Assembly (NCBI RefSeq): GCF_023055435.1
Contig: NW_025963890.1
Location: 64,790,001 to 64,854,000 of the forward strand
DNA from: Haliotis rufescens
Taxonomy: Eukaryota
DNA: 64,000 nucleotides
Direction of reading: 5' to 3'
Shown: positions 47,301 through 63,333 of the stretch, piece by piece
Layout: each line of letters starts with the position of its first letter
Numbering within the stretch: position 1 is the first letter of the stretch
Made by a program: the position numbers and the translations under genes
Notes under the pieces: model-generated
The model's input: only the letters and a program-made list of their open reading frames with translations
Databases searched by the model: none
What the model was told of the DNA's origin: nothing

Positions 47301-50300
47301 GTATCTACGCTGTAGCGTCAGATCACGTGATGACAACTCTGCTTATCAACTCAAGGCAGTTTCCGGAATATGAGTCGGTTTAGCTACTAATAATGTCTTG
47401 AGTCAGATGTTATACAATTCTATGTATTGAAAGTGTTCTCTTATTTTCGTAACGAGAACCAGTGAAAAGTGGGTTAAGCATAAAGAAAGAAGAAAGATTA
47501 AACAGCCCTGCCTACTCAACAGTTTCGCCCTTGGCTGTTATCTTAATTCTATTTATTTAGAAACTGGGGATAATTAATGTCAGCTTGGCCCATCATCCAC
47601 CGCCTTGAGTCCTATGACTTTGTTGTATATAAACATATTTTCAAAATGAAGTTTACCAAGCACAGAGCAAGACACGACCAACCGGTTTTAAGACCTGTGC
47701 AGGTGTAGTAATGTCAAAGTGGTGCGTAAGGCGAAAGTAACATTGTTAGGGGCTCCAATGCCCTGAACCACAACGTTGCACAATTTTGTCGACCATTACC
47801 GGCAGGATTGGAGTGCTGGGGACACATGTTACCCCGGTTCCAAGCAGCATCCAAGCATCCTTGATATCTCGTATTTTGGGGTTCCCTTTATTTTAACGAG
47901 AACTTTTAAAAGTAGGTTAGCAATAGAGAAAGAAGAAAGTTTAAAGAGCGCTGCCCCCCCCCCCCCCCCCCCCCACACACACACACACACACTCCCCCCT
48001 CCCCAACACACATACACACATATACACACACACCTTATTTGGTGTCAAGAAAAGACAGGGCAAAACATGATGAGCCGATTGTTGGATCCGAGCTCAGTTT
48101 AAGACACATCTTACCCTGGTCTAAGCAGGGAAGATAGTTCAAAGACTCCTAAAACAATCCAAAATAACACCAACTACACCATCATGAACGCATTTAAGAC
48201 AATCATCAATGTCACAGGCAAACTAAAACCTAGGTGTAAACCCGAATATGCACAATATTACTAAATGTGCACCCTCATTAAACTTATGAACCGTTTAAAC
48301 AGCTCTTGGGACAAGAGCAGATGCCTTGTTACAAACATACTCCGGTTTTCACTCGCGCTTCCGCCCTAACTCACTAAGGGTAGAAATTAATAATGGGATG
48401 TGGGGGAAAGTAGAAGTTTGATAGATAGCTGGCTTCATGTGTAGGCTAGATGAGCTCGCGCCTTGTCACCAAGGCCATCCTATTTCACTTGAACCGAGAA
48501 CGTGGGCGTATTTGTTTTCCAGCGCCTCAATTGACCAGCTGTCAGTAAGGGTTGTCAGCTGGTGTTGGTCAGCTGGTGTTATCAGCTGATGTTGTCAACT
48601 GGCGTTGTCAACTGGTGTTGTTAACTAGTGTTGTTTACTGGTGTTGTCGGCCGGTGTTGGTCAGCCTATGTTGGGCAACTTGTGCTGTCAGCTGGTGTTG
48701 GTCAGCTGGCGTTGTCAACAGGGGTTGTCCGCTGGTGTTGTTTACTGGTGTTGTCAGCTGGTGTTGTAAACTGGTGTTGGTCAACTGGTTTTGGTCAACT
48801 GGTTTTGTCACTTGCATAGGTTACCACGGGTGAAGGGTGAGGTAAAAGAACAATAAGCATGAAGTAAAGTGTCGAGCCAGTATACAAGGTCACAGCCAAA
48901 GGTTGAGGAGGATACGGGTTGATGTTTTTCAAAAAGAAAGCATTCTAACTGTTGTGGAAAGAGACATGATGAAAAAAAATCTATTGAATATGATATTGAT
49001 TTGTTGACGATGACAAAATGATCTGAACTCTCCTTTTTTGAGACGCATATGTCTATTTTTCGAGGGATTTCACTGCTGCGAACATACTGTTAAATACAAA
49101 TGGTCTTATCAATAGGCCTTTCATGAGGGGACACTGTTAATGCGAAGAAAATGAAAGTAATATGCCATTAAATTAAATGAATTATCTGCTCTCGTCATAT
49201 AAACAACAGTTCAAAGAAAACAACGTTTGTAGGTTAACATTAAATAAGCAAGATGATGGATGAACAAATGTAATACTCATATAGAACAAATGTAAAACTG
49301 TTTTGCAAACCTTCTCGGTCTTTTGTGTTGAGAAACATACTAACGACAAAAGGAACTGTGTGTTATATGACATTCGATAAAAAATATATTTGTTCGAAAT
49401 GATGGTTGTTAATGAGCATACCTGGGGAATGAGCGTAACTTGTAATGAAGGCATTGCAAAAAGCGTTCCAATACAATTTCCAGGATACGGTACAAAACCA
49501 TTACTTTCTGCATTCTCGTAATTCTAGACGTGTATTTCAGAAGAATCACAGCTGAAATGTCAAAGCATTATAACAAGTAAAAATGCTCTGACGCTTTATT
49601 TAGAAAAAAACATTGCTCTAATTGTTTATTCACAACGCGGCTGAGCTTGGGACAGCTCTTCAAGCGGAATGGCGGGCAATCAAACGCAAATTAATCCAAC
49701 AGTATGTCATCAAAGTGTTGTGCATGTATCGCCCAACATGGCGAACACACCAGATATTGATCAGTCATTGTTCCATCCTTGTCACTTCATCACAAAACTT
49801 ATACAGATTAGGAACGGTGGAGTATTCTTGTGGTCCTAGCATTCGCTTGTAATGTCGAAGGCCTGGGTTTGATTCCCTTCATGGATACAATACGTGAATA
49901 TTGCTAAAAGTGGCGTTAAACATAAATCACTCACTCATACATATTATGACACTGTAACAAGTGAACATCGCCTTCTGGCCATGGGGTGTATCACTATGCG
50001 TTGTGTTCTCATTGGTATAGAAAGACTGTGCTTACTGTTGCAGCCATATCCCGTCCAGCCAGCTTTACATGAACAGTGACCGTTTGCCGTGTTACACGTT
50101 GACCTACACCCAGCTCCACATGATGTACAGGATTGCCCGTCCCTGTAATAGCCGCCACTGCATGCTGTAAATTAACACAAATTGTTCCAATGAGAAGTAG
50201 ACAATCATTGATAAACTGGGTATTTTGTACGAAACATCGTGAGCGTTGTATGGTTAGCATACTGAATCGTTGGGCACTGCAGGACCGTACTTCCAGTGTT

Positions 50301-63333: not shown

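What the first reader, a model, noticed from the sequence alone, without database searches (positions are those of the whole stretch)
50036..63333. Variation among array exons is non-synonymous, clustered in 13 nt and shuffled between copies
Seen: copies 2-11 differ at only three sites, all amino-acid changing, within the codons [G/C]GC TGG ACG G[G/A]A [A/T]AT. Variants are AGWTGY (copy 1), ARWTGN (2, 3, 9, 10), AGWTEN (4), AGWTGN (5, 7, 11), ARWTGY (6) and ARWTEN (8), i.e. 6 of 8 possible combinations. All four haplotypes occur for G/R x G/E and for G/R x N/Y although the sites are only 10-12 nt apart. Copy 1 also has K>R and P>S. Inference: short-tract gene conversion or recurrent mutation focused on one charge-changing surface patch. 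The number of sites is small, so selection is not demonstrated.
Basis: partly seen in the sequence, partly recalled or inferred. Interest (0 to 1): 0.75.

Follow-up and report, generated by a model that had tools for sequence, protein, structure and literature searches.

The report
Variable loop in abalone EGF-exon array
A red-abalone receptor phosphatase gene carries a tandem array of almost identical EGF-module exons whose only protein differences sit in one short loop, and these differences look like ordinary array variants spread by unit duplication and exchange, with no sign of a mutation hot spot or demonstrated selection.

Summary
The window has 11 phase 1-1 exons of 129 nt on the minus strand. 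The array runs past the window to 22 exons, and a twin gene 255 kb away has 16. In all 38 copies the replacements outside copy 1 are at exon positions 105 (G/R), 115 (G/E) and 117 (N/Y). The same 6 of 8 haplotypes occur.

- Exchange between units is real but array-wide. 48 of 71 differences between near-identical units reuse alleles from other unit types, and four-gamete failures rise with distance.
- It is not focused on the exon. Three variable sites in 13 nt matches intron density (22% of intron windows have at least 3). Comparable intron site pairs fail the four-gamete test in 5 of 27 cases.
- What stands out is that exon positions 1-104 are nearly frozen: 0 replacements against 9.6 expected.

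One point raises interest. R and E replace two glycines that are G in 17 of 17 paralogous modules.

The gene is a RefSeq-annotated Haliotis rufescens receptor tyrosine phosphatase. It resembles a coding VNTR such as human LPA KIV-2. Selection is not shown, and raw-read support could not be checked. The scan noted this array before (s1-818152, s1-818467).

The parts
49682..64000 (-). In-window part of a tandem array of about 1.3-kb units (1295-1334 nt). Each unit holds one EGF-module exon and one intron. The array continues beyond the window to G000:C112:64870179, giving 22 exons.
50036..50164 (-). Exon copy 1 (3'-most module), AGWTGY with K>R and P>S. It is the edge copy and is identical in the twin array.
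51369..51497 (-). Exon copy 2, ARWTGN. Its variable sites are at window positions 51393 (pos 105), 51383 (pos 115) and 51381 (pos 117). A contig from a probable RNA run lies exactly on this exon.
52664..52792 (-). Exon copy 3, ARWTGN
53978..54106 (-). Exon copy 4, AGWTEN
55308..55436 (-). Exon copy 5, AGWTGN
56621..56749 (-). Exon copy 6, ARWTGY
57955..58083 (-). Exon copy 7, AGWTGN
59264..59392 (-). Exon copy 8, ARWTEN
60596..60724 (-). Exon copy 9, ARWTGN
61891..62019 (-). Exon copy 10, ARWTGN
63205..63333 (-). Exon copy 11, AGWTGN
43814..44579 (-). Two non-repeated EGF-like exons of the same gene, 3' of the array (tblastn matches at 44430-44579 and 43814-43990)
40895..41101 (-). Exon matching the juxtamembrane part of the RefSeq twin protein (residues 761-829, just after the predicted membrane-spanning stretch)
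25563..38585 (-). Exons of two tandem protein-tyrosine-phosphatase domains, running to the last coding exon at 25563-25637
   Evidence: Pfam Y_phosphatase 42.7, 42.3 and 38.4 bits for three single exons (cut-off 20.9).

Best explanation
The stretch is the 3' half of a young coding tandem array. One exon encoding a 43-residue, 8-cysteine laminin-type EGF-like module was amplified in the ectodomain of a red-abalone receptor-type protein tyrosine phosphatase. There are 22 modules in this gene and 16 in a near-identical twin gene.

The array evolves in concert. Unequal crossing-over duplicates and deletes blocks of 3-4 units, and shorter non-reciprocal exchanges move existing variants from one unit type to another. 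Purifying selection keeps the cysteine scaffold (exon positions 1-104) free of replacements. Three replacements in the last inter-cysteine loop (G>R, G>E, N/Y) are tolerated and reached intermediate frequency by riding on the unit types that were amplified. Their 'shuffling' is the same exchange process seen all along the introns.

Shown here: the anatomy, the gene identity, the depletion in positions 1-104, the intron-level density in the loop, and the array-wide mosaic and shared-variant pattern. Inferred: the mechanisms (unequal crossover and gene conversion) and that the loop variants are tolerated and not favoured.
For: Anatomy and gene identity
- Searches give the units, copy numbers and conserved splice borders in 38 of 38 copies.
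- RefSeq Haliotis rufescens LOC124122701 isoform X1 (1498 aa) has 16 modules in exactly the order of the twin array, followed by a predicted membrane-spanning stretch and two phosphatase domains.
- the window gene has the same downstream exons, and Y_phosphatase passes the Pfam cut-off exon by exon.

Constraint
- 4 SNVs in 129 exon nt against 139 in 1151 intron columns (Fisher P = 0.001); pi is 0.0105 against 0.0311.
- positions 3-104 have 0 replacement changes against 9.6 expected (P = 7e-5), and positions 105-128 have 3 against 2.3.
- a 5'-truncated pseudo-exon at the array edge carries 5 changes in 85 nt, including Cys>Gly and a stop codon.

Exchange
- unit types, blocks of several units, a recombinant unit (A12), and 48 of 71 shared within-family variants. 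Edge units differ mostly by private changes.
- the exon sites are no more homoplastic than intron sites.

Against an artefact
- The same haplotype and intron-type combinations recur in both arrays.
- A contig from a probable RNA run covers exactly 51369-51497 with 0 differences and 12 + 14 further letters that do not lie on the intron.
- A DNA contig from another run begins right beside site 105.
Against: - Two of the three replacements hit glycines that are G in 17 of 17 paralogous modules. Positions that vary freely among paralogues stay invariant in the array. Simple relaxed constraint does not predict this.
- The three sites have unusually even allele frequencies. Only 2.2% of intron 13-nt windows reach their summed heterozygosity.
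- C at position 105 sits on four different local intron backgrounds, each of which also exists with G. By exchange alone this needs several tract ends within 10-12 nt.
- Synonymous sites are also low (1 observed against 3.3 expected), so protein-level selection is not cleanly separated from exon-wide homogenisation.
- The 38 copies reduce to about 8-10 unit lineages, and the two arrays are not independent samples.
Confidence: 0.68

Rival explanations
1. Diversifying or balancing selection keeps charge variants (R, E) and Y in the last loop of the module, so the ectodomain carries a mixture of module types with different binding or packing properties.
For: - All three variable sites in interior copies change the amino acid, and two change charge.
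- The alleles are at intermediate frequency. Their summed heterozygosity is in the top 2.2% of intron windows.
- R and E replace glycines that are G in 17 of 17 paralogous modules.
- Glu at the second glycine position also occurs in a 4-fold amplified module block of a Haliotis cracherodii relative, P0014, which reads ...GWRETRC.
Against: - Replacement density in positions 105-128 (3) is not above the intron-rate expectation (2.3), and only 0.6 silent changes are expected there, so no ratio test has power.
- Allele frequencies follow the amplified unit types.
- Homoplasy is the same as in the introns.
Confidence: 0.14
2. Recurrent point mutation at a hypermutable position (105, G<->C) produces the four-haplotype patterns, with no exchange involved.
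For: - Both incompatible pairs involve position 105.
- C and G both occur on four local backgrounds.
- B04 and B08 are 3 differences apart in 1313 nt, and one of them is position 105.
- The pseudo-exon has a further change in the same codon.
Against: - G>C is a transversion away from any CpG.
- The other two differences between B04 and B08 are also pre-existing variants from other unit types (positions 904 and 914). That is the signature of copied patches, not new mutations.
- Four-gamete failure grows with distance, which recurrent mutation does not predict.
Confidence: 0.08
3. The variants, or their combinations, are assembly or polishing errors in a near-identical repeat.
For: - Units are 94-100% alike.
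- B04 (GGY on the epsilon-type intron) and A12 are single cases.
- The three sites could not be read in the run tables, where 15 rows were not shown and all runs were contigs.
Against: - Every haplotype but those two singletons recurs with its own intron markers in both arrays, for example REN in A08, A14, A16 and B10, and GEN in A04, B02 and B06.
- A contig from a probable RNA run matches the RGN exon exactly, and a DNA contig of another run stops beside site 105.
Confidence: 0.05

Closest known systems
Human LPA kringle IV type 2 coding VNTR
   Same: - It is an intragenic tandem array whose units hold complete exons plus introns: 5.6 kb per unit and 1-40 units per allele (abstract of PMC11462820 in the listing).
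- Exon variation is very low.
- Unit subtypes A, B and C differ at two or three exonic positions, are present on several copies, and are ascribed to duplication or gene conversion as 'paralogous sequence variants' (passages of PMC4378929).
   Different: - The LPA subtype differences are synonymous, while here all three change the protein and two hit family-invariant glycines.
- The module is a kringle encoded by two exons, not an EGF-like module encoded by one.
- The abalone gene is a transmembrane phosphatase, not a secreted apolipoprotein.
Receptor-type protein tyrosine phosphatases with EGF-repeat ectodomains in molluscs (RefSeq names: MEGF10/11-like, RPTP epsilon/alpha/kappa-like)
   Same: - The architecture is the same: EGF-like repeats, a predicted membrane-spanning stretch and two phosphatase domains.
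- Relatives occur in H. rufescens, H. cracherodii, H. asinina, H. rubra, oysters and other molluscs.
- Other family members also carry identical multi-module blocks, such as P0014 and P0016.
   Different: Among the proteins I inspected, only this gene pair has a single module amplified 16-22 times. The closest paralogue (P0016) has one copy of the module at the same place. The H. cracherodii protein with the same N-terminus (P0015) has no such array.
Laminin-type EGF-like (LE) modules (netrin, laminin) and SCARF1/MEGF-type repeats
   Same: - It has eight cysteines per 43 residues.
- The best fold matches of the model are netrin-1 LE modules (probability up to 0.97, TM 0.62-0.66), with laminin gamma1 LE modules and the SCARF1 N-terminal fragment lower in the list.
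   Different: - Statistical support is weak: Foldseek E is 0.15 or worse, and the Pfam EGF_laminin hit is 13.1 bits against a cut-off of 21 for one exon.
- As I recall the conventional LE signature, the exon boundaries cut the module in a different register.

Membership tests
EGF-like / laminin-type EGF module | Pfam EGF_laminin (PF00053) or EGF_2 reaching the gathering score | tested here: not met
   one exon translation scores 13.1 bits (cut-off 21) for EGF_laminin and 11.6 (cut-off 22.1) for EGF_2. PF00053 is among the precomputed Pfam domains of the whole RefSeq protein P0001. I did not search joined exons myself.
EGF-like / laminin-type EGF module | Conserved cysteine framework and the G-aromatic-x-G hairpin motif across homologous modules | tested here: met
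   in 22 aligned modules C12, C19, C23, C30, C32, C41, W36, G18 and G28 are invariant, and C1, C15, G35 and G38 are at least 90% conserved. Calling this the EGF signature is from recall.
EGF-like / laminin-type EGF module | Fold similar to solved LE/EGF modules | tested here: inconclusive
   the model has mean pLDDT 83.8. The top hits are netrin-1 LE modules (probability 0.96-0.97, TM 0.62-0.66), but E is 0.15 or worse. The single-sequence model (pLDDT 66.5) gave nothing.
Receptor-type protein tyrosine phosphatase | Y_phosphatase domain (PF00102) above the cut-off | tested here: met
   window exons 37298-37453, 36208-36354 and 33805-33948 score 42.7, 42.3 and 38.4 bits (cut-off 20.9). Exon 38027-38158 scores 18.6, below the cut-off.
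Receptor-type protein tyrosine phosphatase | Membrane-spanning segment between the ectodomain and two tandem phosphatase domains, with the active-site Cys-x5-Arg motif | tested here: met
   the twin gene's RefSeq protein has a hydrophobic stretch after the EGF part and the motifs [10 protein letters not shown] and VCSDGATRSG; the window exons match that protein as well as the twin locus does. The membrane segment was judged by eye, not with a predictor.
Coding tandem array (coding VNTR) under concerted evolution | Head-to-tail units, each holding a complete symmetric exon, with copy number differing between homologous arrays | tested here: met
   there are 22 and 16 units. The exon is 129 nt in phase 1-1, and splice borders are kept in 38 of 38 copies. 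Variation between individuals was not tested.
Coding tandem array (coding VNTR) under concerted evolution | Variants shared among units beyond what new mutation gives, and distance-dependent incompatibility | tested here: met
   48 of 71 within-family variable sites are shared with other families; four-gamete failures run from 5.9% at 15 nt or less to 24.8% beyond 500 nt.
Positively selected hypervariable patch | Replacement variation in excess of silent or neutral variation | tested here: not met
   3 replacements against 2.3 expected at the intron rate in positions 105-128; 22% of intron 13-nt windows have at least 3 SNVs.

The most novel reading that the evidence does not exclude
The amplified ectodomain is a combinatorial stalk. 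Modules whose two family-invariant hairpin glycines are replaced by Arg or Glu are kept on purpose, and unequal exchange deals out different orders and numbers of neutral, positive and negative modules. Alleles and paralogues of this receptor phosphatase would then differ in ligand or self-association properties, giving a germline-variable receptor in a mollusc.
Probability: 0.1. Interest if true: 0.7.

Novelty: new member of a known kind. Interest (0 to 1): 0.33.

Why it matters
The result is a clean, well-resolved example of how a protein domain array is built and kept uniform in an animal genome. Introns drift to about 3% diversity, while the first 104 nt of the exon carry a single silent variant. 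Variants travel between units by exchange, and edge units escape that exchange.

It also warns against reading 'clustered, all non-synonymous, shuffled' variation inside repeats as selection or focused mutation without the intron baseline. The one open point is that charged residues replace two otherwise invariant glycines in about half of the modules. That could be tested with simple protein constructs and would say how much an EGF-type scaffold tolerates.

Tried and rejected
- Tandem Repeats Finder missed the array because its longest period is 500. The repeat finder found it.
- Searching one module against PDB sequences gave 0 hits at E up to 10.
- The single-sequence AlphaFold model was poor (pLDDT 66.5) and its Foldseek search was empty. 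The model from a 22-row alignment was better (83.8) but gave only weak LE-module matches. I could not read model coordinates, so exposure of the three residues was not measured.
- ARAGORN found no tRNA-like gene in 49000-53000, although parts of the intron are dispersed repeats by contig depth.
- Read laying gave contigs only. The related organism B covered only 51014-51384 at 90% or better.
- Paper searches for abalone RPTP/EGF work (0 papers), for tandem exon duplication with EGF and concerted evolution and for mollusc EGF/PTP expansions listed nothing on this gene by title or abstract. I opened none of the papers listed.
- I considered that the twin array is an uncollapsed haplotype and think it unlikely. 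Identity falls from 99.7-99.9% near the array to 97% and then 88-94% further 3', and window 5000-7500 has no twin. I could not settle this.
- I did not model tandem modules or search any self-joined exon model.
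Full report
WHAT IS THERE

The window has 0 N and about 40% G+C. From about 49.7 kb to its end it holds head-to-tail units of 1295-1334 nt that are 94-100% alike. Each unit carries one 129-nt exon on the minus strand, bordered by ttacag|CA...AACA|gtaag. The exon encodes [34 protein letters not shown][R/G]WT[G/E][N/Y]GCN, with one split codon at each end (phase 1-1).

Copies 2-11 differ only at exon positions 105 (C/G, Arg/Gly), 115 (G/A, Gly/Glu) and 117 (A/T, Asn/Tyr). 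Copy 1 adds K>R and P>S. The haplotype list is correct for all 11 copies.

LARGER SAMPLE

The window is G000:C112:64790001-64854000. The array runs on to 64870179, giving 22 exons that I call A01-A22. A second array of 16 exons (B01-B16) lies 255 kb further on. A protein search of the whole assembly found these 38 intact copies. It also found two truncated copies with a stop codon, one copy at 74% identity, and about 22 modules at 46-64% identity, all on the same chromosome between 64.92 and 66.15 Mb.

In the 38 copies the replacement sites are the same three, plus the two in copy 1 of each array. One synonymous site (59) varies in 3 copies near the 5' end of the arrays. Haplotype counts are RGN 9, GGN 9, GGY 11, REN 4, GEN 3 and RGY 2, so it is still 6 of 8, and the two missing types both combine E with Y.

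The two arrays share their edges. Copy 1 is the same in both, both have a 3665-nt intron at A20/B14, and both have the same truncated pseudo-exon at the 5' edge. They differ in the number and order of interior units.

Flanks are 99.7-99.9% identical next to the arrays, over at least 16 kb on the 3' side and at least 18 kb on the 5' side. Identity falls to 97% and then 88-94% further 3', and window 5000-7500 has no twin. I therefore read the pair as paralogues with a recently homogenised or re-duplicated core. An uncollapsed haplotype is not excluded. Either way the 38 copies are not independent.

THE GENE

A search with one 42-residue exon translation found a 1369-aa protein with 13 matched stretches. 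Its cluster holds RefSeq Haliotis rufescens LOC124122701 isoforms X2 (1369 aa) and X1 (1498 aa, named MEGF11 isoform X1).

X1 has 16 modules in exactly the order B16 to B01. These are followed by two unique EGF-like parts, a hydrophobic stretch, and two phosphatase domains with the motifs [10 protein letters not shown] and VCSDGATRSG. X2 lacks the last three modules.

The window gene has the same downstream exons on the minus strand, from 44579 down to 25563. Three of them pass the Pfam Y_phosphatase cut-off on their own. Its N-terminal exons lie beyond the window in L003. So the array encodes most of the ectodomain of a receptor-type tyrosine phosphatase.

The single module is below the Pfam cut-offs (EGF_laminin 13.1 bits, cut-off 21). 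An AlphaFold model from a 22-row alignment (pLDDT 83.8) best matches netrin-1 laminin-type EGF modules, though only weakly.

Relatives with EGF repeats plus phosphatase domains occur in other abalones and molluscs. The closest paralogue, P0016, has one copy of this module at the same place. The H. cracherodii protein with the same N-terminus, P0015, has no such array. The amplification therefore looks young.

EXPRESSION

One contig of a probable RNA run (X15; that it is RNA is the tool's guess) is 155 letters long. It lies on 51369-51497 with 0 differences, and a further 12 and 14 letters at its two ends do not lie on the intron. That run has no depth on the non-repetitive intron bins. This fits spliced exon-to-exon RNA at low level, and it carries the RGN form. 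It is one contig and not proof.

IS THE EXON PATCH SPECIAL?

I aligned 34 interior units. A20 and B14 were left out of the alignment because of their long intron. A01 and B01 were aligned but dropped before the counts, because the sequence downstream of them is not array.
- The exon has 4 variable sites in 129 nt and the intron has 139 in 1151 ungapped columns. Diversity (pi) is 0.0105 against 0.0311, and Fisher P = 0.001.
- The depletion lies entirely in positions 1-104: 1 site against 12.6 expected (P = 5e-5). The last 25 nt have 3 against 3.0 expected.
- By Nei-Gojobori site counts, positions 3-104 have 0 replacement changes against 9.6 expected (P = 7e-5) and 1 silent against 2.7. Positions 105-128 have 3 replacements against 2.3 and 0 silent against 0.6.
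- Three or more variable sites occur in 22% of 898 intron windows of 13 nt. Only the evenness of the allele frequencies is unusual, since 2.2% of windows reach the same summed heterozygosity.
- A truncated pseudo-exon at the 5' edge of both arrays carries 5 changes in 85 nt, including Cys>Gly and a TAA stop. This shows what the exon looks like without selection.

The patch is therefore not a hot spot. It is the one part of the exon that varies at the neutral rate.

IS THE SHUFFLING SPECIAL?

Intron markers define about eight unit types. They recur in blocks of three and four units, with different block numbers in the two arrays. Exon haplotypes follow the unit types. REN occurs in A08, A14, A16 and B10. 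GEN occurs in A04, B02 and B06. RGY occurs in A06 and B08.
- Among near-identical units (10 differences or fewer), 48 of 71 variable sites carry alleles that also exist in other unit types, and 23 are private. New mutation would give only a few percent shared. The edge units differ mostly by private changes.
- Four-gamete failures rise from 11 of 186 pairs at 15 nt or less to 733 of 2953 pairs beyond 500 nt. This pattern is expected from exchange and not from recurrent mutation.
- For common alleles (minor count at least 7), 5 of 27 intron pairs at 15 nt or less fail, against 2 of 3 exon pairs.
- On a whole-unit tree the three exon sites need 3 changes each, and 26 of 47 common sites need 3 or more.
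- Position 105 is the homoplastic site. C occurs on four local backgrounds, and each of those backgrounds also exists with G. In the closest case, B04 against B08 (3 differences in 1313 nt), the other two differences are also borrowed variants.

Exchange is therefore well supported, but it is a property of the whole array.

WHAT REMAINS ODD

In an alignment with 17 paralogous modules from the same chromosome, the R/G and G/E positions are Gly in 17 of 17. The N/Y position varies freely. From recall, these are the two glycines of the C-x-C-x2-G-aromatic-x-G-x2-C hairpin signature of EGF-type modules.

So 15 of 38 modules have Arg and 7 of 38 have Glu at otherwise invariant glycines, while positions that differ freely among paralogues do not vary in the array. 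A H. cracherodii relative has Glu at the same glycine in a block repeated four times. With three sites this cannot be turned into a test. It is the basis of the rival reading (selection on charge variants, about 0.14) and of the novel case.

The ancestral state is G at 105 and G at 115, judged from the paralogues. For N/Y it is unclear, because the closest paralogue has N but both array edges have Y.

COMPARISON

The nearest described system is the human LPA KIV-2 coding VNTR. It also has unit subtypes that differ at two or three exonic positions and are ascribed to duplication or gene conversion, but those differences are synonymous (passages of PMC4378929; abstract of PMC11462820 in the listing). 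My paper searches listed nothing on this abalone gene or array by title or abstract. The gene itself is annotated in RefSeq.

Two earlier notes of this scan describe the same array and its higher-order structure. My results agree with them.

LIMITS
- There were no raw reads. The single read-laying run returned contigs and did not list the three sites.
- There is no population sample.
- Exposure of the three residues was not measured.
- Tandem modules were not modelled, because I left out the step of joining exons. Searches and folds of window sequence were done exon by exon.
- Supplementary files were not consulted.

VERDICT

This is an ordinary coding tandem array under concerted evolution, with one unexplained detail. 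Interest is about 0.33.

Noticed in passing
G000:C112:65095385-65117685 (L004-L007): There is a twin gene with a 16-module array 255,349 bases away. Identity to the window gene is 99.7-99.9% around the array and falls to 97% and then 88-94% further 3'. This could be concerted evolution between paralogues, a recent re-duplication, or an uncollapsed haplotype.
   Followed up: partly
L003:1839-1942 (G000:C112:64871339-64871442) and its twin at L007:1345-1448: A 5'-truncated pseudo-exon sits at the 5' edge of both arrays. It has 5 changes in 85 nt, including Cys>Gly, a TAA stop, and CCC at the R/G codon. The truncation point abuts unrelated sequence, possibly an inserted element.
   Followed up: partly
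G000:C112:64863850-64867514 (unit A20) and 65111356-65115020 (unit B14): One intron in each array is 3665 nt long, about 2.3 kb more than the usual intron of about 1.2 kb. The extra sequence was not examined. The RefSeq model places no exon there.
   Followed up: no
window 46466-46748 and 48551-48810: Two minisatellites with a 13-nt unit (TGTTGTCAACTGG, about 20 copies each, 78-79% matches) lie in the intron between the array and the next exon.
   Followed up: no
window 51014-51095 and 51219-51300 (and the same places in every unit): Parts of the array intron are dispersed repeats. Summed contig depth is in the thousands to hundreds of thousands in all four runs, with many loose ends. ARAGORN finds no tRNA-like structure there.
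   Followed up: partly
window 1612-13617, + strand: Seven EGF-like exons of another gene lie on the opposite strand (pattern C..G.[FYW]G..C...C...GW.G..C). One search also shows a run of internal repeats of about 720 nt at window 3419-5716 (71-96% identity).
   Followed up: no
G000:C112:65007495-65024833 and 65199800-65217138: Four paralogous EGF exons recur in pairs at a constant offset of 192,305 bases with equal scores. This is a second large duplicated segment in the same gene cluster.
   Followed up: no
P0001 against P0009 (RefSeq isoforms X2 and X1 of the twin gene): Isoform X2 lacks exactly the last three modules (B03-B01). Skipping of symmetric array exons may therefore occur, or may only be modelled.
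   Followed up: no
P0014 (Haliotis cracherodii) and P0016 (H. rufescens): Other family members carry identical multi-module blocks: a 142-aa block four times in P0014 and alternating 43-aa pairs in P0016. Recent exon-block amplification therefore recurs in this receptor family.
   Followed up: no
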